From Macrostomum lignano (lineage: Eukaryota), in assembly GCA_002269645.1 (NCBI GenBank), contig NIVC01000460.1, positions 525,984-589,983 of the forward strand: a DNA stretch of 64,000 nt, written 5' to 3'. Of the stretch, positions 12,604-64,000 are shown piece after piece. The translations under genes were made by a program, and so were the position numbers. The notes beneath the pieces were generated by a model. The model was not told where the DNA came from. It ran no database searches and saw only the letters and a program-made list of their open reading frames with translations. Each line of letters opens with the position of its first letter. Position 1 is the stretch's first letter.

Positions 12604-18701
<6,098 letters not shown>

Positions 18702-19485: not shown

Positions 19486-19850
19486 CATATCATTTCCCTC
19501 CGAGCCCATTAAAACCAGCATTCACCTACTATGACTAATTCAGTATAATTGCATATTACTAATTGTCAATTGCTATCTACAGAACTGCTTTCACAACAAA
19601 TTTGGTCTGCCTGCTATTATTTATCAAATTACGTACCAGTGTCACTCTGATCCGATATGTATCTTGCTTTCTACGAGTATTTAATCTGGTGCGGCTGCCG
19701 CCCTGCCGTTATGATGCTAAGCAGATTAAATTAATCTGTCTTCCTCTCACCGAGTTTTGTTCGCATCGATTTATTGCTTTCAGTGGAGTCTGTTGGTAGA
19801 AATATTATATGAGTTTTGTCTGTTAAAATCATAATTTGACTAAATTCTTT

Positions 19851-43253: not shown

Positions 43254-43976
<723 letters not shown>

Positions 43977-44970: not shown

Positions 44971-47900
44971 GTGAATTCGGTCAAGATGTCGTTCATGCTG
45001 GCGGCGCATCAGCAGGAGGTTGAGAAATGGCTGCAGGACAACCGAGATGACGTGGAGTCAGCCGCCATCGGCTGCACTCACCAGGCGCTGCTGGTTCAGC
45101 AAACCAAGCAGGCGGTCCTGCTGGAGGAGATCCAAGCGCTTGAGAGCAGGCTGGACGAGTCCAACAAGTCCGCGGCAGCGTCCCTCACCAAGCTGAAGGC
45201 AATGGAGAGTCAGATTGGCGTGAACCAGCAGGCGCTGACTTACCTTCAGCAGGTGACGTCGCTTGAGACGGCATTCGTGTCCACGGGTCAGAAAGTGATG
45301 GAGAAGGCACTGCAGATGTCCAAAGTTACTGACGGAGTCGTTCTCGAAGCCAAGAAGGTGAGAAAAGAGCCTTCATTTTATTGACAGTACATGAACGAGT
45401 CAAGGACAACTGAAGCAACGTCTATACAGGACGCTTCACTCGAAATCTATGGAAAATGTTTTGAAGGCCACTTTTTGCCGAAAAATACACTACGGAGATA
45501 GGAAGTTTTAATTTTTTAAGCTTCAGCTTCAGCTTCGTTCAGAAAATTAGAATTTATGTTATTTTTCATTCTGGTACAACTGCTCATGTCCTGTGCCTAA
45601 AAATCATAAAAATGGCACGGCTCGGCTCATTGGTTTTATTAATCTATTTTGGCATTCTTAGCTGACTGTGTAACAATATGTGTAACAGATGTGATAAAAT
45701 ATATTCATGTACGACTCGTAACCAAAGATTCGATAACATAGAATCGTAATTTCCTAAAACTTCCTAAAACTCTTCCTAAAATCCTAAAACTTCCTATCTC
45801 CGTAGTGTATTTTTTGACGAAAAGTGGCCTTCAAAACATTATCCATAGATTTCGAGTGTTGCGTCCTTCTACTCTAGTAGTCCTTTGAACGAGTATGCTT
45901 GAGCAATGAGCAGCTATTAAATTTGAACCCAACACATATCAATAAGACATAAGTAGTTTTTACCGGCGACATTTTACATCGTGCCAGATAAAAACTTTAT
46001 ATAGTAAATTAAAATGCAATTTTTTTTGTTTGAAGTTGGAGTTAGAAGAGCGTAAAATCTGGAATTGAGTGTAATAGTGTAAGCAGCAAGAATCTGAACT
46101 TCTAGGTGTATATGCATCAAACCTCGAAAATATTTCCTCCCAGGAGCTGTCGGCCGAGGTCCACGGCACCTGGAGCTGGGTGAGCCAGCTGGCCGACCTG
46201 AACCGGCTCCACACCCGCAACGCCGCGGACTACCAGGCCTTCCATCACAGCGCCTACGAGCTCAACGCCATGCTTAACAGCCGAGCCAGCAGCAGCAGCG
46301 CCGCCATTGCCGCCATTCCCGCCAACGGGATGCTGGGCTCCATCAAGCGCATAAACACCGTGCTCACTGTGAGTAACCTCTTGTCAGTTTCAATATCGGA
46401 AATACTCAAATCGCACACTTCAAAAGTAAAAGCCTCCTCGAACCTCTGCAGGACAACTTGGCCCAGTTCAACCGGCTGTGGCAGCTGTCAGTCGACCTGA
46501 CGCAGCGCAGCCGAGCTGTGGTGCCGCTGCACCTGCGTTTCAGCACTGACGCCATCCCGTTCGCGGGCAAGAACGTGTTCAAGTTCGATGACGGCGAGGT
46601 AAGTGCCAACTGTATTGCAGAGTTAATTACATATTTGATGGCGCTCGCCCCATCATATTCGGACACCTGCGAGTGGAAGTTGCGCCTGAAAACCTCTGCA
46701 CACTACTGACTGAGTAGTGCGGAGAGAAAATGAAGTATGAAATTTAGAATACCGATAAATGGCGATAATAAATATGAGTGTCTTAGAATGTGTGTACGGT
46801 TGTAACCCTGAATTTTAAGGGACCGCACTATGTTTGCTGGTGTAGTCCTGGCTTGTCTGTGGGGACTGGTCCTATTGCTATCTTATTCTTCTGCCTCTCT
46901 GACGATGGTACCAAGCGTCTATACTTCTAATCAACTAAATAAGTCGAAGGTTCGGTAAGTTTCTCTCGATCTTCAACCCTCAACGCGGATGTTTATTTCT
47001 ATTCCTGATGGTTGCAATTTCAATAGATAATGAGCATGCAAATGATTTAAGCAATTTAGTGGAATGAAAAAGGGCTACTTATCTATACTGGTGTTCTTCG
47101 ATCTTGACGTCTCTAAATGGTCTCTAGATCTACTTATCTATACTGGTGTTCTTCGATCTTGACGTCTCTAGATGGTCTCTAGATCTACTTATCTATACTG
47201 GTGTTCTTCGATCTTGACGTCTCTAGATGGTCTCTAGATCTACTTATCTATACTGGTGTTCTTCGATCTTGACGTCTCTAGATGGTCTCTAGATCTACTT
47301 ATCTATACTGGTGTTCATCGATCTTGACGTCTCTAGATGGTCTCTAGATCTACTTATCTATACTGGTGTTCTTCGATCTTGACCTCTCTAGATGGTCTCT
47401 AGATCTACTTATCTATACTGGTGTTCTTCGATCTTGACGTCTCTAGATGGTCTCTAGATCTACTTAGCTATACTGGTGTTCTTCGATCTTGACCTCTCTA
47501 GATGGTCTCTAGATCTACTTATCTATACTGGTGTTCTTCGATCTTGACGTCTCTAGATGGTCTCTAGATCTACTTATCTATACTGGTGTTCTTCGATCTT
47601 GACGTCTCTAGATGGTCTCTAGATCTACTTATCTATACTGGTGTTCTTCGATCTTGACGTCTCTAGATGGTCTCTAGATCTACTTATCTATACTGGTGTA
47701 CTTCGATCTTGACGTCTCTAGATGGTCTCTTTGTTAGATCGGGAGTCTCGGCTCGATTCAAATGAAGTTGCTTCCTTGTCGTTTTTTTGAGTCTGTTAGT
47801 GACGTTGGATGAGAACTCTGGATGGAGGGCGGAGTAGGAGTAGAGGAGTAGCTGGAGCAAAAGGAGGAGCAAGAGAAGGCGGGAAAAAGGAGGCGGGAGC

Positions 47901-50900
47901 TTTATTTTCACTGAACGCTAGTATTAGTAGTATATATATGATTTCTATAACGCATTTCATTGTTGTTGGCTTCCCGCAATAGGATCTTTACTGCCGCAGA
48001 AGCATGCGCTGTACTTTCCAGATAGAAAAACCTTCAAGGTTCGCATTAGACTCAAAAATAGCATTGGGCATAACATGTATAAATTAAGATCACTGCACTA
48101 GTTTTTCTCCTATACATTAAAATCCAGGCCTTCTGAGCTGCGCATTTGCCAGTATTTAACTAAACATTTACACAAAAACTACTGCCGCCTACCGTACGAT
48201 CGTATGGCCTCTCACCCCCACAGACGGTCCTGGAGCCGGGAGAGCAGGTGACTGTCATCGACAACTCTCAGTCCTACACGTGGACGGTGAGGCGCTCGGA
48301 CGGAAGCGAGGTCGAAGTGCCCAGCACCTGCATCTGGCTGCCGCCGGCCGATCCGCAGGCAGTGCAGCTCGCTATCGGGTTTGTAGGGCTTTTGACAGAA
48401 CTGGCAGTTATCTCATTGTCTTTTTATTTTGTCAAAGCCTCATGTTTATTTATTTATGAAAGTGGCTTATAGTTAAAGATAAACATCACAAGTGACAATG
48501 AGGAAAAACATCTCTGCACATTATGCCACTCCCTGGCTCTTTGGCAAATCGAATTTCTTCCGTTTACAGGCTGAGAAGAAAGCTGCTGAACACCTGGTCT
48601 CAGGTTCTGAACCAACTGCGTCAATGGAGTGCCGAGTTCTTTGATTCCTATCTGAGCCGCATGATCCAGAACCCAGTGGTGAGTAATATTACACTTTTTA
48701 TAGCTACGTGTAAAGTTTGCGGCCTTTTAAAGCCTCTTTTCATCGTTTTTGGAATACCAAAACTTAATTAGCAGATGTCGTTATCGGAATAAATCGTTTT
48801 TAAAGTTTAATTCTCAGCCAAATAGTTGAACTTCCTTCATCAGATGATCAGCTCAAAAATCAGAGACGGATCTCTCGCGTTCTTCGAGAGGTTGCGCCTG
48901 TCCAGCCGCACCTTCTTGGGCGTCAACGATCAGCAGGCAGAGCGCATTGACAGTTCCATTGGCAAGGTAGTTGACAGGATTACGATAACCGGTGCGTGTC
49001 TCAAATTGATATTGTTCGTTTAAATTCACCAAAGCAGACATGCAGACCTTTGATACGATTTTTTAGATGGCCCGATGGGCTCTTTAGTTGAGAGCGAGCT
49101 AGCCGTCCTGCAGACGTGCCTGATGAAGCTGGAGGAGCACCTGAACCAGTGGCGCCATTGCTCAAGAGAAGCTCTTGAAGCCGAAAATCAGGAGCGAAGT
49201 CAGACTGACCTATCTAAGGAATCCTCGGAGGTCCTGGCACGCATTGAACTGCTTTCGTAAGTCTAATGGACTTAAAAAACATTTTCATGTATTTTAAACC
49301 TAATAAAATATTAGGTACTCAGGATTTTTATTTAGGAATAGAAGCATGTCGACCATGGTATGGCATGACTCGTCAGTTGTGTTGTACCCATGGATGAAGG
49401 AATAGAAAGGATCGCTGATCTGAAAGCGAGTCTATGGCCAATGCAGTACTTCCTAAAAGTTGGGATATTCCCCTCATGAATTTCATTGGCTGCTGGAATT
49501 TAACAATAGACCCCCCTAAGTTCTTACTGGCTGAAGCTTGTACGCGAGGGAAATTCCAAAGTCACGATTAACGTTAGACATTAATAACTGCTTTTTTCCT
49601 CTGGGCCACGACGGCTTAAGGGATTTAGAACAAGAGAAAAAGTTATCTACGAGTAGTATGTTAGTGTTACAGCCTAGCATGCGCGTTAATCGTGAATTCC
49701 CCCGCATACAAGCTTCAGCCATTAAGAACTTAGGGGGGACTATTATTCAATTCCGGCAGCCAATGAAATTAATTGGGGGGGAATCCCAATTTTCAGGAAG
49801 TCTTGGCCATAGACTTGCTTTCAGATGAGCGATTCTTTCTATTCCTTCATCCATGGTTGTACCCCCCCCCCCGGGATGGCCTGGGAGCTGCGAACCGGCT
49901 AGGGTAGCAGGGGCTGCCTAGCTGGGAGACACCCAGGTCCCGCCTATTCCTGTCCCTAACGCTGCGAGAGTTCACGGGGGCCTCGAGCTGGCGAAAGTTC
50001 ACCGGCCCGACCTCTGGGTGCTGCGAGAGTTCACAGTAAAACTTCCGGCTGGCAAAAGTTCGCTTGTCGGCCCCTGAACACTGCGAGAGTTCACAGTATA
50101 GCTCGATCCCCGCGCGGCACCCCGGAAGGAAATGAGACTCACACCTGCAGTTCGATCCAGCTCCAACAACATGCGGTATACCCCGAACTGAACGTTACGT
50201 GTGTGTATTGATATTAACTGCACTGCCGTCAGCGGGACAAGGGGGGGGGCGGGACGGGGCGGGGGGCGCGCATTAAATAGCAAGGCAAAAGGGGGAGGAG
50301 GGTAGACAGACAGACAATAAGCAAGTACAAACCACCCTGCGGCCAGCCAATCACAAGCCGCCAGCCGGGGGAGGGGTGGAGCAAATTGAGCCGGCCCGCG
50401 CACGAGACCGGCGGCCTGGGCAGGCCGAGGCCAGACTAGGGAGAGACTTAAGCCCCCAAACCCCAGCCCGACCGGCGGCACAACCCAGCGCGATGGGGGG
50501 GGGGAGAAAGAGAGAGAGAGAGAAAAGGGCCGGGAGGGTGAAGCCCTCGCAGACGCAGCACTGCACAACAGTTATTAGCTTTTAACTGGTTTATCAAGCA
50601 TAAAGCAATGCTTTCTGGAGAATTTCTTAGTCGTAAGGTCCAGTTAGTTTCATTGATAAGACAGAACTTAATTACATAAATAGCTCGAGCACTAATCATG
50701 AATTATTTTGTAATGGCTATTGGAGGACTACTTTCATAAGAACCGCCACGGCAACCCGAATTCAACGGGTATTCATACGCTCGTGCCGAAAATGCATAAA
50801 AATACTTGTAGAGAATCAAAGATTCTTTCGTGAAAGCCATCTCTGTACTTTAAAAGTAAGGATAGATGAAACAGAGGCAAATTCTGCGATACTATGAAAT

Positions 50901-53900
50901 AGAAGCACCTAAACGTGGCATGAATTTGTTGAACTTGCAGACAGCTGCAAAAGGAGTCACAGTCTCAGTTCCGTGACCTGCAGCGAAGCATTTCTAATTG
51001 GAGGCTTCAAGATGTGGCGTCGAAGTTCCAAGTCACCAAGGTAATTAATATTTAAACTGCATGCTGTAGCTTCATTGGCTTTATTCAAGTCAGCTAATCG
51101 GTATGTTTTACTTCGATCCCACAGATTTCGCGACAGCCGCTGTTCTACGACAAATCATCGCTTTCCGTAATGGACAGCGTCACAAGAGCGTCGGGGAAAT
51201 CGGAAGAGAGACAGACAGCAGAGTGGCGGCTGATTGGAACAATCCAAGGGAGAGCAGAAGGAAACTCAGCGGTGAATGTGACAGCAAGCGGTTGTCACGC
51301 ATCTACAAATCAATATCACATTGGATTCAAATCTGCAGAAGAAGTAACAAGCTCGAGAGCTGCCGTATACAGGTCTGAAGAGAGACCAAAATCAGAAAGT
51401 AAAAAGATTCAAGTAGTTTCTAGCGGCTGTCATAAAGAAATTTTGCCAAGTAAAGAGCCAGACACTTCGTCGCAGGACTTCCAAGCGTTGGTGCTGAAGT
51501 ACGTTGAACAGCACAAGTCGGAATTCTTCGCCATATTTGCTACATGGAGCGACTTTCAAGCAGAAATTCGTCGCTACGTACGCGAGCATGCTTGGGAGTT
51601 TTCTGATATCTTCTCCTGGAGCGGGTTCAGCGACCAAGTTCGAAAGCACGTTTTGGAGCACAAAGAGGAATTCATTGCGCTGCTTGGCCTAAACAAAGAA
51701 GTGAACGTAGAGCGACGCATTACACTTGAAAGGCCACCAGTGCAAGTGTCGCAAACTCAGTGCTGGAGAGAGATCAAAGAAAGTGAATCTGCTGTCAGTT
51801 TTGAACAAAGACAACAAAAACCTGCAATTTCAGTCACAGAAGCCTACAGAGAACAAGCCGATAAGAAGACTGAACTGAAGAGTGCAGGATGCTTCATAGA
51901 AAAAGTCTTCGTCAGTGCCAAAGTTCAGAAAACAACCCCAGAGCTAATAATATTTTCTCACGGGGCATTCAAAGAACGCACATTTTCTACCGCAAGCATC
52001 AAAGTCGAAAACAAGTCGAACACAACCGGAAGTGGGTGCTACTCAGAGTGGCAATTATCGGAAAAATCGGTTTACTTCAAAGAGACTATAAAACAAAATG
52101 TAACTTCCTGCCATTCCGAAACACAGTATCAGGACTCTCGAGCCAAATTCGATATTTCAAGTCCAAAAATAAGCGCAAGCGGCTGTTTCAAGCAAATCAC
52201 GCTCGAGCCGGCTTCCGTGACGTGCGATTGGAGGCCGAAATATGACAACTCCGGCTGCTACTACGAGACAAGCTACCAAGCCAGTAGCGCAAAGTTCATC
52301 TCACCGGCGCCAACGCTTACTGCAAGCGGCTGTTTCAAGCAAATCACGCTCGAGCCGGCTTCCGTGACGTGCGATTGGAAGCCGAAATATGACAACTCCG
52401 GCTGCTACTACGAGACAAGTTACCAAGCCAGTAGCGCAAAGTTCATCTTACCGGCGCCAACGCTTACTGCAAGCGGCTGTTTCAAGCAAATCACGCTCGA
52501 GCCGGCTTCCGTGACGTGCGATTGGAGGCCGAAATATGACAACTCCGGCTGCTACTACGAGACAAGTTACCAAGCCAGTAGCGCAAAGTTCATCTTACCG
52601 GCGCCAACGCTTACTGCAAGCGGCTGTTTCAAGCAAATCACGCTCGAGCCGGCTTCCGTGACGTGCGATTGGAGGCCGAAATATGACAACTCCGGCTGCT
52701 ACTACGAGACAAGTTACCAAGCCAGTAGCGCAAAGTTCATCTTACCGGCGCCAACGCTTACCGCAAGCGGCTGTTTCAAGCAAATCACGCTCGAGCCGGC
52801 TTCCGTGACGTGCGATTGGAGGCCGAAATATGACAACTCCGGCTGCTACTACGAGACAAGTTACCAAGCCAGTAGCGCAAAGTTCATCTTACCGGCGCCA
52901 ACGCTTACGCAAGCGGCTGTTTCAAGCAAATCACGCTCGAGCCGGCTTCCGTGACGTGCGATTGGAGGCCGAAATATGACAACTCCGGCTGCTACTACGA
53001 GACAAGTTACCAAGCCAGTAGCGCAAAGTTCATCTTACCGGCGCCAACGCTTACCGCAAGCGGCTGTTTCAAGCAAATCACGCTCGAGCCGGCTTCCGTG
53101 ACGTGCGATTGGAGGCCGAAATATGACAACTCCGGCTGCTACTACGAGACAAGTTACCAAGCCAGTAGCGCAAAGTTCATCTTACCGGCGCCAACGCTTA
53201 CTGCAAGCGGCTGTTTCAAGCAAATCACGCTCGAGCCGGCTTCCGTGACGTGCGATTGGAGGCCGAAATATGACAACTCCGGCTGCTACTACGAGACAAG
53301 TTACCAAGCCAGTAGCGCAAAGTTCATCTTACCGGCGCCAACGCTTACCGCAAGCGGCTGTTTCAAGCAAATCACGCTCGAGCCGGCTTCCGTGACGTGC
53401 GATTGGAGGCCGAAATATGACAACTCCGGCTGCTACTACGAGACAAGTTACCAAGCCAGTAGCGCAAAGTTCATCTTACCGGCGCCAACGCTTACCGCAA
53501 GCGGCTGTTTCAAGCAAATCACGCTCGAGCCGGCTTCCGTGACGTGCGATTGGAGGCCGAAATATGACAACTCCGGCTGCTACTACGAGACAAGTTACCA
53601 AGCCAGTAGCGCAAAGTTCATCTTACCGGCGCCAACGCTTACCGCAAGCGGCTGTTTCAAGCAAATCACGCTCGAGCCGGCTTCCGTGACGTGCGATTGG
53701 AGGCCGAAATATGACAACTCCGGCTGCTACTACGAGACAAGTTACCAAGCCAGTAGCGCAAAGTTCATCTTACCGGCGCCAACGCTTACCGCAAGCGGCT
53801 GTTTCAAGCAAATCACGCTCGAGCCGGCTTCCGTGACGTGCGATTGGAGGCCGAAATATGACAACTCCGGCTGCTACTACGAGACAAGTTACCAAGCCAG

Positions 53901-56900
53901 TAGCGCAAAGTTCATCTTACCGGCGCCAACGCTTACCGCAAGCGGCTGTTTCAAGCAAATCACGCTCGAGCCGGCTTCCGTGACGTGCGATTGGAGGCCG
54001 AAATATGACAACTCCGGCTGCTACTACGAGACAAGTTACCAAGCCAGTAGCGCAAAGTTCATCTTACCGGCGCCAACGCTTACCGCAAGCGGCTGTTTCA
54101 AGCAAATCACGCTCGAGCCGGCTTCCGTGACGTGCGATTGGAGGCCGAAATATGACAACTCCGGCTGCTACTACGAGACAAGTTACCAAGCCAGTAGCGC
54201 AAAGTTCATCTTACCGGCGCCAACGCTTACCGCAAGCGGCTGTTTCAAGCAAATCACGCTCGAGCCGGCTTCCGTGACGTGCGATTGGAGGCCGAAATAT
54301 GACAACTCCGGCTGCTACTACGAGACAAGTTACCAAGCCAGTAGCGCAAAGTTCATCTTACCGGCGCCAACGCTTACCGCAAGCGGCTGTTTCAAGCAAA
54401 TCACGCTCGAGCCGGCTTCCGTGACGTGCGATTGGAGGCCGAAATATGACAACTCCGGCTGCTACTACGAGACAAGTTACCAAGCCAGTAGCGCAAAGTT
54501 CATCTTACCGGCGCCAACGCTTACCGCAAGCGGCTGTTTCAAGCAAATCACGCTCGAGCCGGCTTCCGTGACGTGCGATTGGAGGCCGAAATATGACAAC
54601 TCCGGCTGCTACTACGAGACAAGTTACCAAGCCAGTAGCGCAAAGTTCATCTTACCGGCGCCAACGCTTACCGCAAGCGGCTGTTTCAAGCAAATCACGC
54701 TCGAGCCGGCTTCCGTGACGTGCGATTGGAGGCCGAAATATGACAACTCCGGCTGCTACTACGAGACAAGTTACCAAGCCAGTAGCGCAAAGTTCATCTT
54801 ACCGGCGCCAACGCTTACCGCAAGCGGCTGTTTCAAGCAAATCACGCTCGAGCCGGCTTCCGTGACGTGCGATTGGAGGCCGAAATATGACAACTCCGGC
54901 TGCTACTACGAGACAAGTTACCAAGCCAGTAGCGCAAAGTTCATCTTACCGGCGCCAACGCTTACCGCAAGCGGCTGTTTCAAGCAAATCACGCTCGAGC
55001 CGGCTTCCGTGACGTGCGATTGGAGGCCGAAATATGACAACTCCGGCTGCTACTACGAGACAAGTTACCAAGCCAGTAGCGCAAAGTTCATCTTACCGGC
55101 GCCAACGCTTACCGCAAGCGGCTGTTTCAAGCAAATCACGCTCGAGCCGGCTTCCGTGACGTGCGATTGGAGGCCGAAATATGACAACTCCGGCTGCTAC
55201 TACGAGACAAGTTACCAAGCCAGTAGCGCAAAGTTCATCTTACCGGCGCCAACGCTTACCGCAAGCGGCTGTTTCAAGCAAATCACGCTCGAGCCGGCTT
55301 CCGTGACGTGCGATTGGAGGCCGAAATATGACAACTCCGGCTGCTACTACGAGACAAGTTACCAAGCCAGTAGCGCAAAGTTCATCTTACCGGCGCCAAC
55401 GCTTACTGCAAGCGGCTGTTTCAAGCAAATCACGCTCGAGCCGGCTTCCGTGACGTGCGATTGGAGGCCGAAATATGACAACTCCGGCTGCTACTACGAG
55501 ACAAGTTACCAAGCCAGTAGCGCAAAGTTCATCTTACCGGCGCCAACGCTTACCGCAAGCGGCTGTTTCAAGCAAATCACGCTCGAGCCGGCTTCCGTGA
55601 CGTGCGATTGGAGGCCGAAATATGACAACTCCGGCTGCTACTACGAGACAAGTTACCAAGCCAGTAGCGCAAAGTTCATCTTACCGGCGCCAACGCTTAC
55701 CGCAAGCGGCTGTTTCAAGCAAATCACGCTCGAGCCGGCTTCCGTGACGTGCGATTGGAGGCCGAAATATGACAACTCCGGCTGCTACTACGAGACAAGT
55801 TACCAAGCCAGTAGCGCAAAGTTCATCTTACCGGCGCCAACGCTTACTGCAAGCGGCTGTTTCAAGCAAATCACGCTCGAGCCGGCTTCCGTGACGTGCG
55901 ATTGGAGGCCGAAATATGACAACTCCGGCTGCTACTACGAGACAAGTTACCAAGCCAGTAGCGCAAAGTTCATCTTACCGGCGCCAACGCTTACCGCAAG
56001 CGGCTGTTTCAAGCAAATCACGCTCGAGCCGGCTTCCGTGACGTGCGATTGGAGGCCGAAATATGACAACTCCGGCTGCTACTACGAGACAAGTTACCAA
56101 GCCAGTAGCGCAAAGTTCATCTTACCGGCGCCAACGCTTACTGCAAGCGGCTGTTTCAAGCAAATCACGCTCGAGCCGGCTTCCGTGACGTGCGATTGGA
56201 GGCCGAAATATGACAACTCCGGCTGCTACTACGAGACAAGTTACCAAGCCAGTAGCGCAAAGTTCATCTTACCGGCGCCAACGCTTACTGCAAGCGGCTG
56301 TTTCAAGCAAATCACGCTCGAGCCGGCTTCCGTGACGTGCGATTGGAGGCCGAAATATGACAACTCCGGCTGCTACTACGAGACAAGTTACCAAGCCAGT
56401 AGCGCAAAGTTCATCTTACCGGCGCCAACGCTTACCGCAAGCGGCTGTTTCAAGCAAATCACGCTCGAGCCGGCTTCCGTGACGTGCGATTGGAGGCCGA
56501 AATATGACAACTCCGGCTGCTACTACGAGACAAGTTACCAAGCCAGTAGCGCAAAGTTCATCTTACCGGCGCCAACGCTTACCGCAAGCGGCTGTTTCAA
56601 GCAAATCACGCTCGAGCCGGCTTCCGTGACGTGCGATTGGAGGCCGAAATATGACAACTCCGGCTGCTACTACGAGACAAGTTACCAAGCCAGTAGCGCA
56701 AAGTTCATCTTACCGGCGCCAACGCTTACCGCAAGCGGCTGTTTCAAGCAAATCACGCTCGAGCCGGCTTCCGTGACGTGCGATTGGAGGCCGAAATATG
56801 ACAACTCCGGCTGCTACTACGAGACAAGTTACCAAGCCAGTAGCGCAAAGTTCATCTTACCGGCGCCAACGCTTACCGCAAGCGGCTGTTTCAAGCAAAT

Positions 56901-59900
56901 CACGCTCGAGCCGGCTTCCGTGACGTGCGATTGGAGGCCGAAATATGACAACTCCGGCTGCTACTACGAGACAAGTTACCAAGCCAGTAGCGCAAAGTTC
57001 ATCTTACCGGCGCCAACGCTTACTGCAAGCGGCTGTTTCAAGCAAATCACGCTCGAGCCGGCTTCCGTGACGTGCGATTGGAGGCCGAAATATGACAACT
57101 CCGGCTGCTACTACGAGACAAGTTACCAAGCCAGTAGCGCAAAGTTCATCTTACCGGCGCCAACGCTTACTGCAAGCGGCTGTTTCAAGCAAATCACGCT
57201 CGAGCCGGCTTCCGTGACGTGCGATTGGAGGCCGAAATATGACAACTCCGGCTGCTACTACGAGACAAGTTACCAAGCCAGTAGCGCAAAGTTCATCTTA
57301 CCGGCGCCAACGCTTACTGCAAGCGGCTGTTTCAAGCAAATCACGCTCGAGCCGGCTTCCGTGACGTGCGATTGGAGGCCGAAATATGACAACTCCGGCT
57401 GCTACTACGAGACAAGTTACCAAGCCAGTAGCGCAAAGTTCATCTTACCGGCGCCAACGCTTACTGCAAGCGGCTGTTTCAAGCAAATCACGCTCGAGCC
57501 GGCTTCCGTGACGTGCGATTGGAGGCCGAAATATGACAACTCCGGCTGCTACTACGAGACAAGTTACCAAGCCAGTAGCGCAAAGTTCATCTTACCGGCG
57601 CCAACGCTTACGCAAGCGGCTGTTTCAAGCAAATCACGCTCGAGCCGGCTTCCGTGACGTGCGATTGGAGGCCGAAATATGACAACTCCGGCTGCTACTA
57701 CGAGACAAGTTACCAAGCCAGTAGCGCAAAGTTCATCTTACCGGCGCCAACGCTTACTGCAAGCGGCTGTTTCAAGCAAATCACGCTCGAGCCGGCTTCC
57801 GTGACGTGCGATTGGAGGCCGAAATATGACAACTCCGGCTGCTACTACGAGACAAGTTACCAAGCCAGTAGCGCAAAGTTCATCTTACCGGCGCCAACGC
57901 TTACTGCAAGCGGCTGTTTCAAGCAAATCACGCTCGAGCCGGCTTCCGTGACGTGCGATTGGAGGCCGAAATATGACAACTCCGGCTGCTACTACGAGAC
58001 AAGTTACCAAGCCAGTAGCGCAAAGTTCATCTTACCGGCGCCAACGCTTACTGCAAGCGGCTGTTTCAAGCAAATCACGCTCGAGCCGGCTTCCGTGACG
58101 TGCGATTGGAGGCCGAAATATGACAACTCCGGCTGCTACTACGAGACAAGTTACCAAGCCAGTAGCGCAAAGTTCATCTTACCGGCGCCAACGCTTACTG
58201 CAAGCGGCTGTTTCAAGCAAATCACGCTCGAGCCGGCTTCCGTGACGTGCGATTGGAGGCCGAAATATGACAACTCCGGCTGCTACTACGAGACAAGTTA
58301 CCAAGCCAGTAGCGCAAAGTTCATCTTACCGGCGCCAACGCTTACCGCAAGCGGCTGTTTCAAGCAAATCACGCTCGAGCCGGCTTCCGTGACGTGCGAT
58401 TGGAGGCCGAAATATGACAACTCCGGCTGCTACTACGAGACAAGTTACCAAGCCAGTAGCGCAAAGTTCATCTTACCGGCGCCAACGCTTACCGCAAGCG
58501 GCTGTTTCAAGCAAATCACGCTCGAGCCGGCTTCCGTGACGTGCGATTGGAGGCCGAAATATGACAACTCCGGCTGCTACTACGAGACAAGTTACCAAGC
58601 CAGTAGCGCAAAGTTCATCTTACCGGCGCCAACGCTTACCGCAAGCGGCTGTTTCAAGCAAATCACGCTCGAGCCGGCTTCCGTGACGTGCGATTGGAGG
58701 CCGAAATATGACAACTCCGGCTGCTACTACGAGACAAGTTACCAAGCCAGTAGCGCAAAGTTCATCTTACCGGCGCCAACGCTTACCGCAAGCGGCTGTT
58801 TCAAGCAAATCACGCTCGAGCCGGCTTCCGTGACGTGCGATTGGAGGCCGAAATATGACAACTCCGGCTGCTACTACGAGACAAGTTACCAAGCCAGTAG
58901 CGCAAAGTTCATCTTACCGGCGCCAACGCTTACCGCAAGCGGCTGTTTCAAGCAAATCACGCTCGAGCCGGCTTCCGTGACGTGCGATTGGAGGCCGAAA
59001 TATGACAACTCCGGCTGCTACTACGAGACAAGTTACCAAGCCAGTAGCGCAAAGTTCATCTTACCGGCGCCAACGCTTACTGCAAGCGGCTGTTTCAAGC
59101 AAATCACGCTCGAGCCGGCTTCCGTGACGTGCGATTGGAGGCCGAAATATGACAACTCCGGCTGCTACTACGAGACAAGTTACCAAGCCAGTAGCGCAAA
59201 GTTCATCTTACCGGCGCCAACGCTTACCGCAAGCGGCTGTTTCAAGCAAATCACGCTCGAGCCGGCTTCCGTGACGTGCGATTGGAGGCCGAAATATGAC
59301 AACTCCGGCTGCTACTACGAGACAAGTTACCAAGCCAGTAGCGCAAAGTTCATCTTACCGGCGCCAACGCTTACCGCAAGCGGCTGTTTCAAGCAAATCA
59401 CGCTCGAGCCGGCTTCCGTGACGTGCGATTGGAGGCCGAAATATGACAACTCCGGCTGCTACTACGAGACAAGTTACCAAGCCAGTAGCGCAAAGTTCAT
59501 CTTACCGGCGCCAACGCTTACCGCAAGCGGCTGTTTCAAGCAAATCACGCTCGAGCCGGCTTCCGTGACGTGCGATTGGAGGCCGAAATATGACAACTCC
59601 GGCTGCTACTACGAGACAAGTTACCAAGCCAGTAGCGCAAAGTTCATCTTACCGGCGCCAACGCTTACCGCAAGCGGCTGTTTCAAGCAAATCACGCTCG
59701 AGCCGGCTTCCGTGACGTGCGATTGGAGGCCGAAATATGACAACTCCGGCTGCTACTACGAGACAAGTTACCAAGCCAGTAGCGCAAAGTTCATCTTACC
59801 GGCGCCAACGCTTACCGCAAGCGGCTGTTTCAAGCAAATCACGCTCGAGCCGGCTTCCGTGACGTGCGATTGGAGGCCGAAATATGACAACTCCGGCTGC

Positions 59901-62307
59901 TACTACGAGACAAGTTACCAAGCCAGTAGCGCAAAGTTCATCTTACCGGCGCCAACGCTTACCGCAAGCGGCTGTTTCAAGCAAATCACGCTCGAGCCGG
60001 CTTCCGTGACGTGCGATTGGAGGCCGAAATATGACAACTCCGGCTGCTACTACGAGACAAGTTACCAAGCCAGTAGCGCAAAGTTCATCTTACCGGCGCC
60101 AACGCTTACCGCAAGCGGCTGTTTCAAGCAAATCACGCTCGAGCCGGCTTCCGTGACGTGCGATTGGAGGCCGAAATATGACAACTCCGGCTGCTACTAC
60201 GAGACAAGTTACCAAGCCAGTAGCGCAAAGTTCATCTTACCGGCGCCAACGCTTACCGCAAGCGGCTGTTTCAAGCAAATCACGCTCGAGCCGGCTTCCG
60301 TGACGTGCGATTGGAGGCCGAAATATGACAACTCCGGCTGCTACTACGAGACAAGTTACCAAGCCAGTAGCGCAAAGTTCATCTTACCGGCGCCAACGCT
60401 TACCGCAAGCGGCTGTTTCAAGCAAATCACGCTCGAGCCGGCTTCCGTGACGTGCGATTGGAGGCCGAAATATGACAACTCCGGCTGCTACTACGAGACA
60501 AGTTACCAAGCCAGTAGCGCAAAGTTCATCTTACCGGCGCCAACGCTTACCGCAAGCGGCTGTTTCAAGCAAATCACGCTCGAGCCGGCTTCCGTGACGT
60601 GCGATTGGAGGCCGAAATATGACAACTCCGGCTGCTACTACGAGACAAGTTACCAAGCCAGTAGCGCAAAGTTCATCTTACCGGCGCCAACGCTTACCGC
60701 AAGCGGCTGTTTCAAGCAAATCATTTACCAAAACTCTGCTGCTATATTTGTGCCAAAAGTCGATGTAACTGCGTCGGGCTGCCTTAAAGAGCTTTCATTT
60801 GATAATTCGTCGGTGACAGCGACCGCAAATGTGACAGTCGCTGCCTCTGGATTCTTTAGTGAGTCTCTTTCTCATCTTCGGGTCGTCAAATTTACTGATG
60901 TTTCAACAAAAGTTTCTGCTTCTGGTTGCTTCCATGAGAATCCTCTAAGTCTGAGATGGCTTCAAGTGGATGTTTCAAGGAAATTCAGAGGAGCACATCG
61001 TCTGCAAGATTTCTCTTCCAACTGCCAACTACGGCATCCGGAACGTTCAACGAGCGAGTCGCTGTTGAAGAGTTAAAAATAAGCACACCGCCTTCGATGC
61101 CAGTCATACGAAGCATGCCAATCGTTGATTCGGGCTGCGAGTTCGTTGGATCGACTGCTGAACTCATTTCAGAAAGTCGCGTTGACGAAAGACAAGTTCA
61201 GCAGCAGCACAGTAGCAGCATGTAAGTTTCGTGGATTATGGGTTCCTATTGAATACTTCAATTCTAAGTTTCTTTTTCGTTTCCGAACGTTCCTCACAAC
61301 ACGCGAGATTTTGCATTTTAGATATGCACTAAGCGTCGGTCAGAGCAGTTCTGCCAGTAGGGCGACCAGGACCTCCGAGGCGCAGACTGATTTGAACTAC
61401 AAGTCCGCATTGTGGAACATGTTTGTATTGAAGAACGGTCGCGTTGACGTCAACCTCTCCTTCATAGTTTCGTATTTCGGAGTCGAAGCTTTCGCTCGCG
61501 AGTACATGTTACTTCGCGAATTTCGAACGTTGCAACGCAAGTTGGCGAAGGAGGGGAAGTCGGATTCGCGACGGCGTCATCCAGAAGCGCCAATCTCATT
61601 CAGAGCAGGTCGTTTGAGTCGCAGTCGAGTGCGTCTCGTGTCTATGGATCTGGTGTTGTCAACATTGGTGGATCTAGCGGTGGGATGTTAGACCTTTCTG
61701 ATACGAACACCAGCAGGATCTCGACTATCCAGAGACAGTCATCCGGAACATCTGGAGTCGTGAGGATTAATGGAAGCAACGAGTTTACGTCATTTGGCTC
61801 ACGAACAGAATCGGTTCCTGTGGTATCCAGGGAGTTGCATCTGGAGATCCTAGATCAAGTGTAGTCAGCATTGGCGGATCAGAAGGAGAAATGTTGGACC
61901 TGTCCAGTTCGTTCGCCACCAGGCTTCCATCAGTCCAGAGACAAATAGAATTTAATAATTTTTCTGGTGCACATGCCGATGTTTCCGACCTGTCCGGTGT
62001 GATCAGTTCTGCAAGCGGTACGTCTGCTATTCAGCGGCAGTCGTCAGGCCGTTCAGGTGAAAGGATCGTGACGCAGAGCAGCGGCAGCGGCATCGTCAAT
62101 ATGTCTGAGACGGTCAGCTCCGGTTCGCGAGGCTTCGCAGTGTCTGGGGACGGCCTGTCCAGCGTTTACCGATCGGTCTCTGGAATCGACGGCTCTGATG
62201 GCAGTGTGCAGGCAGCCCTGGCCTCCATGGTGAGCGTAGGCGAAAGTAACAGCGGCATTACTCGACTCTCCACCCTGGAGGGTCGCATGCTGAACCTGTC
62301 AGACTAG
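44971..62307 (+). CDS. Plakin-domain protein with giant Cys/Tyr-rich repeat tail, copy C (about 4200 aa). Exons 44971-45357 (probable ATG 44986), 46144-46368, 46452-46598, 48224-48378, 48570-48678, 48826-48991, 49067-49256, 50941-51040, 51125-61221, 61322-62307
   Basis: Exons 2, 3, 4, 5, 7 and 8 have lengths identical to copy B (225, 147, 155, 109, 190, 100 nt) and the same phases; canonical splice sites. Single-base restorations are needed at about 52908, 57611, 60940, 61500-61600 and 61821. The intron at 61222-61321 has GTAAGT...TTTTAG. Confidence 0.75.
45428..45867. mobile_element. MITE-like fold-back element with about 82-bp inverted repeats, in copy C intron 1
   Basis: AGGACGCTTCACTCGAAATCTATGG...TACGGAGATAGGAAGTTTTA is inverted at about 45785-45867 with few mismatches; no clear TSD. 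Confidence 0.7.
47076..47730. repeat. 55-bp minisatellite, about 12 copies, in copy C intron 3
   Basis: Unit TACTTATCTATACTGGTGTTCTTCGATCTTGACGTCTCTAGATGGTCTCTAGATC; period 47076 to 47131. Confidence 0.97.
48224..48378 (+). CDS. Plakin-type SH3 domain exon (copy C)
   Basis: Same peptide as the copy B SH3 exon; CAG acceptor at 48221-48223, GT donor at 48379. Confidence 0.85.
49389..49855. mobile_element. 467-bp MITE with about 190-bp TIRs and 8-bp TSD (P- or hAT-superfamily)
   Basis: Ends CATGGATGAAGGAATAGAAAG / CTTTCTATTCCTTCATCCATG; TSD GTTGTACC at 49381-49388 and 49856-49863; inverted similarity continues to TCACGATTAACG. Confidence 0.85.
52175..60720 (+). repeat. Coding repeat of copy C: 58 x 147-bp (49-aa) Cys/Tyr-rich units
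   Basis: Unit SGCFKQITLEPASVTCDWRPKYDNSGCYYETSYQASSAKFILPAPTLTA; period 52175 to 52322; (60699-52175+2)/147=58. Confidence 0.95.
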
Positions 62308-64000
62308 ACACCTGTGCTGGAGACGTGGGCCCGTTTTTTAATGGACTGAAACAATGATGAACCCGTTCGTACAGTAGTTGCTTCTTACCCTTCTAACCTA
62401 CGCTAGCTAGTAGAAGTAGATTATTCCGAAAGTTCTATAACTTATTAGATTCAACTTATTTGATCCGCTAATGATTTTTACCGGGGTCCGAGTGCTCAAT
62501 ACCTGATAGTGTGCATCACAGCGCGGAAATGAATTCGATATTTATTTCCGAGGTCTACGAGGTCTCGTAAAAACGAGTTTCTTGAGCCATCTTGTGATTC
62601 AACAGCTGAGAAGCAGCGCTTCGCTTATAATGTTGTTTCGGCCGTTTGAACAAAGTAATTGAAGGTGTAAAGTTAAGAAACTATTTTTAATTTTAAAAGG
62701 GTTTTATGTCAAAGGGAAAAATGACTTGCATTCTTGAATTTACGAAATCTAAGCTTTGCTCAAACGGCTCACGCCCATCTGAAGTTACTCCGTAAAAAAG
62801 CGCCTGAAGCTGCGCTTCTATGGCGACCTGGCCATGATCAATTAGATATTTTTTCTGTCATTCAGAAACAGTAGAATTCTAACACACCATATTTATTACT
62901 CACTATACTGAGTAGCTACCCATCTAATAAGAGTTTACATTTCTAAATTTCTAAAATTATTAACACGTACCATTAGGGCAAATTTTGTTTTAACTACAAA
63001 GTAGCTGTATATTTTTAAAAAGGCACTATAAAGTATCTTTTTTTATAGACGAAATACACAGCAGATTTTCCTATAACAGCTATTTTCCCTCACTAGTAAT
63101 AAAAAATTATTGATAATAAAGAAAATAATAATTTTATGGTTGCTTTTGCATATTGTGAAAGCAATCTTAGCTAATAGATTGAAAATTTTAGTTAAAAACA
63201 ATGTAATAATGCATTGAAACCAGCGGACCAGCTTGATTGATCTAATGGTCTGGTGCTGGTGGGCATAGCTGCAAATATAGTTAACGCCACAGAAATAATC
63301 TATTGAGTACAGGTGCATAAAAGTTAACTAATCAATAATTATAAGTTTAGCGGTAATTTAATTGGGTGACTTAAAAATCAGTCTAAATTCAAACATTTCC
63401 GTTCGTGCCGGAGGACTACTTTAATTAATACGAACAGACTGGCAAAGTTGGTTCAAAGTTGAGATTCCGCTTCAAAGTGACTTTCAGGCTTATCAACGAA
63501 CTGCTATCAACAGAAGCCGGTGCTGCTGTGCTTACTATCTATAAGTCGAAAGCCGGCCAATTTATGCTGACAGATTTTGCGCAATGACCAGTTCGTGTGG
63601 CGCTTATCGGCGCTGGAATTTGACTGGCGATATATAATTAGCCAAGTGCTGAGCGAATCCAGTATTCTTGCAAACTCTTCTTTGCTTCTCAGCCTCATGT
63701 CGTCGCTGTCAAAGAAGAGCGCCTACAATAGCCCGGGCGAGAGGGAGCGGCACCGAAAGAACTGTCTTCTCTGCTAGACATTGCTGGCGTGGAATACCGG
63801 TTCGTTCGGCTGTTTCGCGGCGTTCCCGTGTGCCCTTTTCCCGGAGTAAAGAGGCGCCTGCAGGTAACCGAATGTTTTCAGATTGATGCAACATGCCGCG
63901 TCGTCTGCCCCCAGCCTAGTGAAAATGGCGTGTCGTGTACCGTATTTTATAGGACACATTTTATCATAGACAGGATGGATTACACAACCTGGCGCACTTT

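What the first reader, a model, noticed from the sequence alone, without database searches (positions are those of the whole stretch)
51270..61150. Giant Cys/Tyr-rich SGC array: 58 x 49 aa grown from a 24/25-aa ancestral motif
Each unit is two SGC half-repeats (24+25 aa) with 3 Cys, 4 Tyr and 1 Trp, giving about 174 Cys and 232 Tyr over about 2840 aa. Degenerate single SGC motifs flank both sides (VTASGCH, VSSGCH, KSAGCF, TGSGCY; then TASGCL, SASGCF, ASSGCF, VDSGCE), so one doublet of an older diverged array was recently amplified. No signal peptide is evident at the probable start, so this would be a cytoplasmic Cys-rich polymer. It is a candidate for disulphide/dityrosine cross-linking or metal binding, as in cornification-type proteins, or a beta-solenoid (inference).
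Basis: partly seen in the sequence, partly recalled or inferred. Interest (0 to 1): 0.75.

Follow-up and report, generated by a model that had tools for sequence, protein, structure and literature searches.

The report
Giant repeat exon of flatworm plakin
The 58 near-identical 49-residue Cys/Tyr-rich repeats are real and form most of a 10-kb exon in an uncharacterised, cytoplasmic plakin-type cytoskeletal linker gene of the flatworm Macrostomum lignano, one of a family whose members each carry their own huge repeat array.

Summary
The array is real: 58 units of 147 bp at window 52174-60723. They are virtually identical, with one synonymous C/T site. Each encodes 49 aa with 3 Cys, 4 Tyr and 1 Trp, and degenerate SGC motifs flank both sides.

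An independent M. lignano assembly has the same locus with 44 units and its own, different 1-bp deletions. The breaks are therefore most likely long-read consensus errors.

The array lies in a 10,097-bp exon (51125-61221) of a multi-exon gene starting near 44971. Its N-terminus is a plakin domain: spectrin repeats with an embedded SH3 (Pfam SH3_10; plectin and desmoplakin are the best structural matches). So the protein is cytoplasmic, though its start is about 6 kb upstream of the one assumed.

A divergent paralog has more than 60 tandem 24-aa units, TGSGCFRETSYNESRVRFKEEIAV. This supports descent from a 24-aa motif. The Cys is not conserved across paralogs, which weakens the cross-linking and metal-binding idea.

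No fold could be predicted and no expression data were found. The best reading is a lineage-specific plakin cytolinker with a rapidly turning-over structural repeat rod.

The parts
44971..45357 (+). Exon 1 of 'gene B'. Probable start (MSFMLAAHQQEVEKWLQDN...) and first spectrin-like repeat of the plakin domain. There is no hydrophobic signal sequence.
   Evidence: ORF and translation. tblastn of the M. lignano models P0002/P0003. GT donor at 45358. Weak Pfam Spectrin hit, E = 0.003.
46144..46598 (+). Exons 2 (46144-46368) and 3 (46452-46598), separated by a short intron. They encode plakin-domain spectrin repeats.
   Evidence: tblastn at 94-97% identity to P0002. Canonical AG/GT junctions. They fall within the stretch aligned to plectin 3PE0 and desmoplakin 3R6N.
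48224..48678 (+). Exons 4 (about 48224-48376) and 5 (48570-48678). They encode the plakin-type SH3 (…VEVPSTCIWLPPADP…) and the following helix. The exon 4 end is approximate.
   Evidence: Pfam SH3_10 PF17902, E = 8.7e-10, 39 bits against a cut-off of 22.8. PDB plectin 3PE0 E = 9e-4 and desmoplakin 3R6N E = 4e-3 on this exon alone.
48844..51040 (+). Exons 6 (48844 to about 48991), 7 (about 49066-49256) and 8 (50941-51040). They encode the last helical part of the plakin domain and the linker (…QLQKESQSQFRDLQRSISNWRLQDVASKFQVTK).
   Evidence: tblastn to P0002. Junction sequences and codon phases are consistent. AF2 predicts helices up to residue 474 with pLDDT 75-90 for residues 290-430.
51125..61221 (+). 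Giant exon 9, 10,097 bp. It contains everything the finding describes. The acceptor is …cccacag|ATT and the donor is …AGCAT|gtaagt.
   Evidence: Sequence. It is continuous with P0002 on the 5' side and with P0001 on the 3' side.
51270..52173 (+). N-terminal flank. It carries degenerate SGC motifs (VTASGCH, VVSSGCH, KSAGCF, TGSGCY, ISASGCF), the last three spaced 49 aa apart. It also holds one copy of the family's helical 'EFxxxFxxWSxF' module, at about 51461-51695.
   Evidence: Translation and motif spacing. The helical module matches the repeats of paralog gene A and is predicted helical at low confidence.
52174..60723 (+). The SGC array: 58 units of 147 bp (49 aa), about 99.9% identical to one another.
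   Evidence: Exactly one frame is open per unit; the other two carry 1-2 stops per unit.
52908..52909 (+). 1-bp deletion in unit 5 (ACC/ACT-G becomes AC-G). It shifts the frame.
   Evidence: It is absent at this unit in the other assembly, which has different deletions.
57611..57612 (+). 1-bp deletion in unit 37, at the same within-unit site as the deletion in unit 5. It shifts the frame again.
60724..61150 (+). C-terminal flank. It carries degenerate 24-26-aa motifs (TASGCL, AASGFF, SASGCF, ASSGCF, TASGTF, VDSGCE). A 1-bp deletion after 60936 (GAAGAA becomes GAGAA) shifts the frame relative to L001 and P0001.
61858..62307 (+). Last exon, encoding a Ser/Gly-rich tail (…SIGGSDGEMLDLSSS…SSGSRGFAVSG…RMLNLSD*). 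One or two small exons lie between 61222 and 61857; they were not mapped precisely.
   Evidence: tblastn of P0001 residues 353-501 at 98.7% identity. The tail motif is shared with the 69-aa unit of paralog gene A.

Best explanation
The SGC array is the coding core of a single 10.1-kb exon in a Macrostomum lignano gene. The gene encodes a protein of about 4,100 residues, with no signal peptide, that belongs to the plakin cytolinker superfamily.

Shown:
- The N-terminal 470 residues or so form a plakin domain: about four spectrin repeats with the family-specific SH3 inserted.
- The giant exon follows. It contains degenerate copies of a motif of about 24 aa, [VLT]-[TA]-x-S-G-[CV]-[FY]-x-E…, one helical module, and the 58-unit array.
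- A Ser/Gly-rich tail ends the protein.
- The gene is one of at least 5-6 M. lignano paralogs. Three lie in tandem in this window. They share the plakin domain, but each has amplified a different segment into its own homogenised array: 49 aa x 58 here, 69 aa x 24 in the neighbour, 24 aa x more than 60 and 57 aa x at least 16 elsewhere.
- Every unit length is a multiple of three.

Inferred:
- The 49-aa unit is a doublet of the 24-aa motif. It was amplified recently, or is kept uniform by unequal crossing-over, and its copy number is unstable (58 versus 44 in two assemblies).
- The three frame breaks are long-read consensus errors, so the real product is uninterrupted.
- Mechanistically, the plakin domain docks the protein to a junctional or membrane-cytoskeleton partner. 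The array takes the place of the coiled-coil rod and plakin-repeat region of classical plakins. It would then form a long, aromatic- and Cys-rich, probably beta-hairpin-based rod or self-associating scaffold that gives mechanical strength.
- Oxidative cross-linking is possible but is not required by the motif.
For: Array and unit:
- TRF and segmentation and the translation.
- One frame only is open per unit.

Gene structure:
- Canonical splice sites with consistent phases.
- Colinearity with the M. lignano gene models P0002 on the 5' side and P0001 on the 3' side.

Plakin domain:
- Pfam SH3_10, E = 8.7e-10, above the gathering score. The same domain is found in every paralog.
- phmmer against PDB: plectin 3PE0 at 1.1e-8 and desmoplakin 3R6N at 2e-8, over residues 126-315.
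- Foldseek on the AF2 model: the top hits are the desmoplakin four-spectrin-repeat fragment 3R6N (E = 5e-6, 468 aligned columns) and plectin 3PE0.

Frame breaks as errors:
- The independent assembly GCA_002269645.1 is colinear at 95-99% identity.
- It has 44 units, with five 1-bp deletions at other units. All sit at dinucleotide runs or at the polymorphic site.
- It lacks the 60936 deletion.
- Its copy of the neighbouring gene A array has no indels, whereas the window's copy has three.

24-aa ancestry:
- Motif spacing, the paralog array and the shuffle tests.

Selection for frame:
- The coding arrays have periods of 147, 207, 249/498, 72 and 171 bp, all multiples of 3.
- Most of the roughly 17 non-coding minisatellites in the window do not.

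Lineage restriction of the repeat:
- An exhaustive HMMER scan of 1.84 billion representatives found only M. lignano proteins as credible homologues.
Against: - No transcript or protein evidence was obtainable here. The gene IDs do not appear in the searched full text or in the supplements of four M. lignano expression papers.
- Both available assemblies carry frame-breaking deletions in the array, so an intact ORF has not actually been observed end to end.
- Because the units are nearly identical, the absence of stop codons in 58 units says nothing about purifying selection.
- AF2 gives no confident structure for the units (pLDDT 40.7) or for the motif-bearing flanks (pLDDT 22-27). 'Beta-rich rod' therefore rests only on composition, strand-turn patterning and low-confidence DSSP.
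- The binding partners and the cell type are unknown.
Confidence: 0.7

Rival explanations
1. This is a decaying pseudogene or a neutral minisatellite. The frame-shifting deletions are real, the giant exon is no longer translated, and the array is simply one more product of a genome that makes tandem arrays everywhere.
For: - There are three 1-bp deletions in the window's giant exon and five in the other assembly's array.
- The window holds about 17 other minisatellites in 64 kb.
- Near-identity of the units means the open frame is uninformative about selection.
- The NCBI model for this gene terminates out of frame in unit 1.
Against: - The deletions are at different units in the two assemblies, and all are single-base losses at 2-base runs or at the one polymorphic site. 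This is typical of long-read consensus error.
- The 60936 deletion is absent from both L001 and P0001.
- Gene A's array is intact in L001.
- All five coding arrays of the family have periods divisible by 3, which would happen by chance with probability about 0.004, unlike the non-coding arrays.
- The array joins both flanks in frame.
Confidence: 0.12
2. The protein is a cross-linked, 'cornification-like' or sclerotised intracellular material. The Cys and Tyr of the units are the functional residues, forming disulphide or dityrosine bonds or binding metal, to harden a structure such as the epidermal cell web, the copulatory stylet or the sperm bristles.
For: - The region has 174 Cys and 232 Tyr, and aromatic residues make up 14% of it.
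- The context is cytoplasmic.
- Plakin relatives envoplakin and periplakin scaffold the mammalian cornified envelope, and Cys-rich cytoplasmic proteins harden hair and sperm accessory fibres (own knowledge).
- Identical beta-prone units favour intermolecular assembly (inference).
Against: - The motif's Cys is replaced by V, A, S, T or F in 8 of 19 motif copies across paralogs.
- The sister arrays have 0 or 1 Cys per unit: the 69-aa unit of gene A has none.
- The cytosol is reducing, so disulphides would need cell death or a specialised compartment.
- There is no metal-binding pattern of the CxxC or His-Cys kind.
- Nothing is known about the tissue of expression.
Confidence: 0.2
3. The units are Ig-like, FN3 or cadherin-like beta-sandwich domains, two units per domain. 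UniProt's name for P0001 ('Fibronectin type-III domain-containing protein') suggests this, as do hits to prokaryotic 'putative Ig domain' and 'tandem-95 repeat' proteins.
For: - HMMER hits P0007, P0008, P0009 and others, with E from 2e-16 to 5e-4.
- Two units make 98 aa, about the size of one such domain.
- The units share the word T(C/F)DW(R/T)P(K/D)(Y/F)xxSG(C/S)Y..T(S/F)Y.
Against: - Only every second unit aligns, and then only over about 20 residues. The pairwise BLASTP E-value is 6e-5 at 27% identity, inflated by repetition.
- Other prokaryotic hits match different words of the unit: FKQITLP in P0011 and ILPFPILTASG in P0014.
- Pfam finds no Ig, FN3 or He_PIG domain at E <= 1.
- The PDB sequence search finds nothing.
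- AF2 builds no sandwich.
- Identical half-domains are not how such folds are built.
Confidence: 0.04
4. The size and uniformity of the array are assembly artefacts. The true locus has far fewer units, or more heterogeneous ones.
For: - Copy number differs between assemblies, 58 against 44.
- The C/T pattern along the array is unrelated in the two assemblies.
- The indel errors show imperfect consensus.
- The older assembly behind P0001 breaks inside the array.
Against: - Three independent assemblies or annotations all contain the same unit at the same locus.
- Arrays of 6.5-8.5 kb are within long-read length.
- Several paralogs show the same kind of array.
- M. lignano is a recent polyploid with chromosomal polymorphism (PMC7053086), so differences between haplotypes are expected.
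Confidence: 0.08

Closest known systems
Plakin family cytolinkers (plectin, desmoplakin, BPAG1/dystonin, envoplakin, periplakin)
   Same: - The N-terminal plakin domain is made of spectrin repeats with an SH3 inserted in one of them. Evidence: SH3_10, sequence hits to 3PE0 and 3R6N, and Foldseek top hits 3R6N and 3PE0.
- The protein is cytoplasmic and very large.
- Most of its length is encoded by one huge exon.
- It has a Ser/Gly(/Arg)-rich C-terminal tail.
   Different: - There are no plakin repeat domains (Pfam Plectin, PF00681, is not found).
- No coiled-coil rod, calponin-homology, EF-hand or GAR domains were detected.
- The region after the plakin domain is built from an unrelated 24-aa motif and a helical 'WSxF' module. 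Both are known only from M. lignano.
Giant plakin-repeat exon of invertebrate spectraplakins (Drosophila shot, PMC2173965; C. elegans VAB-10A, own knowledge)
   Same: A single very large exon encoding a long series of tandem repeats follows the plakin domain in an invertebrate cytolinker gene.
   Different: - Those repeats are canonical 38-aa plakin repeats and have diverged from one another.
- Here the repeats are a novel 49-aa unit in 58 virtually identical copies.
- This gene lacks the rest of the spectraplakin architecture.
Epiplakin, and epidermal repeat proteins with homogenised single-exon arrays (involucrin, filaggrin/hornerin, trichohyalin); own knowledge
   Same: - Long arrays of near-identical units within one exon.
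- Copy number that varies between alleles.
- A structural role in tough epithelial cytoplasm.
- Epiplakin is itself a plakin with nearly identical terminal repeats.
   Different: There is no sequence relationship. These are vertebrate-specific proteins. Their cross-linking chemistry (transglutaminase on Gln/Lys) is not suggested by the SGC unit.
Paralog Mlig024865 (P0010/P0018/P0019) and other M. lignano SH3_10 proteins (P0003, P0023-P0027)
   Same: - The same plakin domain (28-76% identity).
- The same 24-aa SG[CV][FY]xE motif.
- The same habit of carrying a homogenised array. SGCFRETSYNESRVRF aligns with SGCYYETSYQASSAKF.
   Different: - The unit is 24 aa (or 57 or 69 aa in other paralogs) instead of 49 aa.
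- Cys content is lower: 1 per 24-aa unit (Mlig024865), 1 per 57-aa unit (P0025) and 0 per 69-aa unit (gene A), against 3 per 49-aa unit here.
- All are annotated only as hypothetical or 'SH3_10 domain-containing'.

Membership tests
Plakin family | Plakin domain: tandem spectrin repeats (SR3-SR6 or beyond) | tested here: met
   phmmer against PDB gives plectin 3PE0 at E = 1.1e-8 and desmoplakin 3R6N at E = 2e-8. The AF2 model is helical over residues 7-474. Foldseek's best hit is the desmoplakin four-spectrin-repeat fragment 3R6N (E = 5e-6, prob 1.0, 468 columns), followed by plectin 3PE0, 5J1I and 5J1H. The TM-scores are low (0.2-0.4) because the model's confidence is modest.
Plakin family | Plakin-type SH3 domain embedded in a spectrin repeat (Pfam SH3_10) | tested here: met
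   PF17902 scores E = 8.7e-10, 39 bits against a gathering score of 22.8, on the exon at 48224-48376. It is present in all paralogs. The hallmark VPSxCxxxPPP is conserved.
Plakin family | Plakin repeat domains (38-aa plakin repeats, Pfam PF00681) that bind intermediate filaments | tested here: not met
   No PF00681 hit at E <= 1 in the N-flank plus units, nor at E <= 0.01 in P0001, P0010, P0023 or P0025. This feature is also absent from some accepted family members, such as periplakin (own knowledge), so it is not strictly required.
Plakin family | Central coiled-coil rod for dimerisation | tested here: inconclusive
   No long heptad region follows the plakin domain. AF2 predicts coil with pLDDT 22-27 for residues 480-598 and 669-895 of P0002. 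No dedicated coiled-coil predictor was run.
Spectraplakin subfamily | N-terminal calponin-homology actin-binding domain and C-terminal spectrin rod, EF-hands and GAR domain | tested here: not met
   Exon 1 starts directly in a spectrin repeat, and the upstream sequence belongs to paralog gene A and to satellites. The gene ends at 62307, and a sulfotransferase gene follows. Pfam finds none of these domains.
Ig-like / FN3 / He_PIG ('putative Ig', tandem-95) repeats | Beta-sandwich domain of about 95 aa recognisable by profile | tested here: not met
   Pfam gives no hit. The similarity to P0007 is confined to a word of about 20 aa in alternate units. AF2 builds no sandwich.
Beta-solenoid repeat proteins | Regular coil of short strands, one or more rungs per repeat | tested here: inconclusive
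   AF2 on 4 units gives about 22 short strands, but with mean pLDDT 40.7 and pTM 0.28. A profile of the 24-aa motif finds nothing in the PDB.
Secreted Cys-rich matrix or adhesive proteins | N-terminal signal peptide and extracellular domains | tested here: not met
   The N-terminus, MSFMLAAHQQEVEKWLQDNRDD…, is hydrophilic and helical and forms part of a cytoplasmic plakin domain. No signal-peptide predictor was available; this is judged from the sequence.

The most novel reading that the evidence does not exclude
M. lignano has evolved a private family of plakin-domain giants. In these proteins the intermediate-filament-binding plakin repeats are replaced by a new 24-aa beta-hairpin motif (SG[CV][FY]xE…). 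In each paralog this motif is blown up into a hyper-uniform array that self-assembles, and in the Cys/Tyr-rich gene B version cross-links, into a novel intracellular skeletal material. Candidates for that material are the epidermal cell web, the anchor-cell core, the stylet and the sperm bristles.
Probability: 0.15. Interest if true: 0.7.

Novelty: new variant of a known kind. Interest (0 to 1): 0.45.

Why it matters
Plakins are the universal linkers between junctions and the cytoskeleton. Their filament-binding end is thought to be conserved: plakin repeats, or a spectrin rod with a GAR domain.

Here a flatworm keeps the docking (plakin) end but has swapped the other end for a lineage-specific short motif. 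That motif is repeatedly and independently amplified into arrays of 1.5-8.5 kb that differ between paralogs and between haplotypes.

If the proteins are expressed, two things follow:
- They give a tractable example of how giant structural proteins are invented and remodelled by unequal crossing-over. M. lignano has RNAi and transgenesis.
- They are candidates for the unidentified proteins of flatworm intracellular skeletal structures.

Practically, the locus also shows that frame breaks in such arrays in long-read assemblies should not be read as pseudogenisation. It also shows that current gene models there are chimeric or truncated.

Tried and rejected
- Pfam on the N-flank plus units, on P0001 and on the paralogs found nothing but SH3_10. 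The hits of the gene A helical repeats to VQ, DUF285 and others are repeat-inflated noise.
- PDB sequence searches with three units, with the helical module, with P0001 and with a 24-aa motif profile gave no hits.
- The TAL-effector 'hits' to the SH3 exon query came from about 20 intronic residues matched many times over. They were discarded.
- AlphaFold2 on 4 units gave pLDDT 40.7, so I did not send that model to Foldseek.
- AF2 on P0002 with an 11-sequence paralog alignment was confident only in part of the plakin domain.
- The prokaryotic 'putative Ig' and 'tandem-95' hits were examined and rejected as homologues.
- The literature holds nothing on Mlig010347 or on Macrostomum with plakin, desmoplakin or plectin.
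- The supplements of four M. lignano expression papers do not contain the gene IDs of this family. Tissue of expression therefore stays unknown.
- A charge-hydropathy calculation puts the unit only slightly on the 'folded' side, which is not decisive.
- A tRNA scan of the window found none.
- I considered whether the motif could be a degenerate plakin repeat. The period (24 against 38 aa) and the lack of any PF00681 signal argue against it, but no profile-profile comparison with plakin repeats could be run.

Full report
1. The observation

Tandem Repeats Finder reports a single array at 52174-60723 with period 147, 58.2 copies and 99% matches.

I anchored on a 21-mer and cut the array into units:
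- There are 58 full units and a diverged 59th.
- 39 units are identical to the consensus.
- The only recurrent variant is C/T at unit position 143, a synonymous ACC/ACT Thr site.
- Units 1-2 carry three or four further substitutions.

The unit encodes ASGCFKQITLEPASVTCDWRPKYDNSGCYYETSYQASSAKFILPAPTLT, with 3 Cys, 4 Tyr and 1 Trp. All eight flanking SGC-type motifs are also there.

- Units 5 and 37 are 146 bp long. Both have lost the base at the polymorphic site (…CTTAC-GCA…).
- A third single-base loss lies after 60936.
- The mechanical ORF list therefore shows three abutting ORFs in three frames: 51170-52954, 52951-57657 and 57654-61076.

2. Organism and an independent copy of the locus

The sequence is eukaryotic, with GT-AG introns and dense minisatellites. 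Protein searches return only Macrostomum lignano entries:
- P0001, a 501-aa fragment, begins inside the array and runs to the stop.
- P0002 (BOX15_Mlig010347g1) covers the 5' exons and ends in the first unit.

The contig that encodes P0002 is NIVC01000773.1 of GCA_002269645.1, fetched as L001. It is colinear with window 19.6-64 kb at 95-99% identity.

In L001 the same array has 44 units and five 1-bp deletions. All of them sit at two-base runs or at the C/T site, and all are in different units from the window's deletions. L001 and P0001 both read straight through the 60936 position.

The neighbouring paralog's array has three 1-bp deletions in the window and none in L001.

The simplest reading is that the frame breaks are long-read consensus errors, and that copy number differs between haplotypes or subgenomes. 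M. lignano is a recent polyploid with chromosomal polymorphism (PMC7053086). An end-to-end intact ORF has nevertheless not been seen in any assembly.

3. Gene context

The ATG at 51170 is internal. The exon starts at 51125 (…cccacag|ATT) and ends at 61221 (…AGCAT|gtaagt), a length of 10,097 bp. Upstream exons at about 44971-51040 have canonical junctions and consistent phases, and they match P0002.

These upstream exons encode a plakin domain. Three lines of evidence agree:
- Pfam SH3_10, E = 8.7e-10, above the gathering score.
- phmmer against PDB: plectin 3PE0 at 1.1e-8 and desmoplakin 3R6N at 2e-8.
- An AlphaFold2 model built with an 11-sequence paralog alignment is helical through residue 474, with SH3 strands at 256-287. 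Its best Foldseek matches are the desmoplakin four-spectrin-repeat fragment 3R6N (E = 5e-6) and plectin 3PE0.

The N-terminus (MSFMLAAHQQEVEKW…) has no signal-like hydrophobic stretch.

No plakin repeats, CH, EF-hand or GAR domains are found. After the giant exon, small exons and a last exon (61858-62307) encode a Ser/Gly-rich tail. The estimated product is about 4,100 aa.

4. A family with paralog-specific arrays

The window holds three tandem relatives:
- Gene A, 27290-38203. Its plakin exons are 83-98% identical to gene B's at the protein level. It also has 83-aa helical 'EFxxxFxxWSxF' repeats and a 69-aa x 24 array.
- Gene B, the subject of the finding.
- A partial gene C, at 22.4-24.6 kb.

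More paralogs lie elsewhere in the genome. All have SH3_10 and all are from M. lignano.

The most informative is Mlig024865 (P0010/P0019). It has a plakin domain, then scattered SG[VC][FY]RE motifs, then more than 60 tandem 24-aa units of TGSGCFRETSYNESRVRFKEEIAV. P0025/P0027 carry at least 16 units of 57 aa that contain the variant MGAFDE.

Several results support the claim that the 49-aa unit grew from a doublet of a motif of about 24 aa:
- Half 2 of the gene B unit aligns with the 24-aa unit: SGCYYETSYQASSAKF against SGCFRETSYNESRVRF, shuffle z = 6.1.
- Half 2 also aligns with the degenerate last unit (z = 7.1).
- Half 1 keeps only the SGCF[KR][EQ] head (z = 4.0 against the 24-mer, and 1.8 against half 2).
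- C-flank motifs are spaced 24-26 aa apart and N-flank motifs 49 aa apart.

An alignment of 19 motif copies shows only the Gly invariant. The 'Cys' position is C in 11 copies, V in 5, and A, S, T or F in the others.

All coding arrays of the family have periods divisible by three (147, 207, 249/498, 72, 171 bp). Most of the window's roughly 17 non-coding arrays do not. This is the only signal of selection for frame that such young arrays can give.

5. Distribution and spurious relatives

An exhaustive HMMER scan of 1.84 billion representatives, using the first 594 residues of the giant exon, found 15 hits.
- The credible ones are all M. lignano proteins: P0002, P0001, P0003, P0006 and P0010.
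- The rest are prokaryotic 'putative Ig domain', 'tandem-95 repeat' or PKD-type proteins.
- These each match a different word of 10-20 residues in the unit. P0007 matches TCDWRPKYDNSGCYYETSY only in alternate units, P0011 matches FKQITLP, and P0014 matches ILPFPILTASG.
- I treat them as chance matches inflated by repetition.

UniProt's 'Fibronectin type-III' label on P0001 has no support from Pfam.

6. Structure

AlphaFold2 on four units, without an alignment, gives about 22 short strands at mean pLDDT 40.7. In the P0002 model the motif-bearing regions have pLDDT 22-27.

The composition is neutral in charge, 14% aromatic and 8% Pro. It lies slightly on the folded side of the charge-hydropathy boundary.

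The strand-turn pattern, together with the amphipathic RVRFKEEIAV strand of the 24-mer, suggests one beta-hairpin per 24 aa. This is inference.

7. Mechanism

Shown: plakin-domain head, novel repeat body, Ser/Gly tail, no secretion signal, array turnover.

Inferred:
- The head docks to a junctional or cortical partner, as in other plakins.
- The body replaces the rod and plakin-repeat region as a long, possibly self-associating scaffold.
- Uniformity is maintained by unequal exchange.
- Cross-linking through Cys or Tyr remains possible for gene B specifically, but it is not a property of the family motif.
- M. lignano anchor cells use a cell-type-specific intermediate filament (PMC4016567). 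A plakin partner there is plausible but untested.

8. What could not be established

Transcription, translation, tissue and partners remain unknown. Full-text and supplement searches for the gene IDs found nothing.

9. Verdict

The evolutionary inference (a 24-aa motif amplified as a doublet) is well supported. The 'cytoplasmic' call is right for a better reason than the one given. The chemistry (cross-linking or metal binding) and the solenoid fold are unsupported so far.

The object is an unstudied, lineage-specific variant of a known kind, a plakin cytolinker with a novel homogenised repeat rod. Interest is moderate.

Noticed in passing
window 27290-38203: This is a tandem paralog, 'gene A'. 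Its plakin-domain exons are 83-98% identical to gene B's. A giant exon follows, with 83-aa helical 'EFxxxFxxWSxF' repeats (31128-32796, period 249/498 bp) and a 69-aa x 24 array (33152-38115; the unit contains NIGGSDGEMLDLSGS and has no Cys). The window copy has three 1-bp deletions. The other assembly has 17 units and no indels.
   Followed up: partly
window 22360-24600: This is a partial third paralog, 'gene C'. It has only the linker exon, about 6-7 degenerate helical WSxF repeats and a short tail motif. No plakin-domain exons were detected in 1-22 kb.
   Followed up: partly
window 1-50000 (e.g. 1-644, 6810-7718, 14059-15423, 19850-21614, 40684-42432, 43254-43975, 47075-47730): Non-coding micro- and minisatellites are exceptionally dense: about 17 arrays with periods of 4-77 bp. 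They include (GTCT)n over 1.4 kb, (CTAT)n over 0.7 kb, a 23-bp unit x 77, and a 15/23/38-bp array of 1.7 kb that is open in all three frames.
   Followed up: no
L001 10001-33123 (NCBI model BOX15_Mlig010347g1 = P0002): The public gene model looks chimeric. Its first exon matches gene A's exon 1 (window 27290-27682, 98%) better than gene B's (84%). It then uses gene B exons. It ends out of frame inside SGC unit 1 because of a 1-bp deletion in that assembly.
   Followed up: partly
window 60718/60724 and 60864/60880: Two pairs of compensating 1-bp indels, relative to L001 and P0001, change short stretches of protein: KQIIYQ against KQSSYQ, and SESLSHLRVVKF against SESSFSSSVVKF. It is unclear which assembly is right.
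   Followed up: no
P0019 (UniProt A0A1I8I886, 4429 aa; not in the window): The paralog with the 24-aa array is fused, in its UniProt model, to about 1,700 residues of retroelement-like sequence (RNase H / reverse-transcriptase-like) at the N-terminus. This is almost certainly an annotation artefact.
   Followed up: no
window about 63630-64000: A sulfotransferase gene (Pfam Sulfotransfer_1 on the L001 annotation) begins just downstream of gene B and runs off the end of the window.
   Followed up: no
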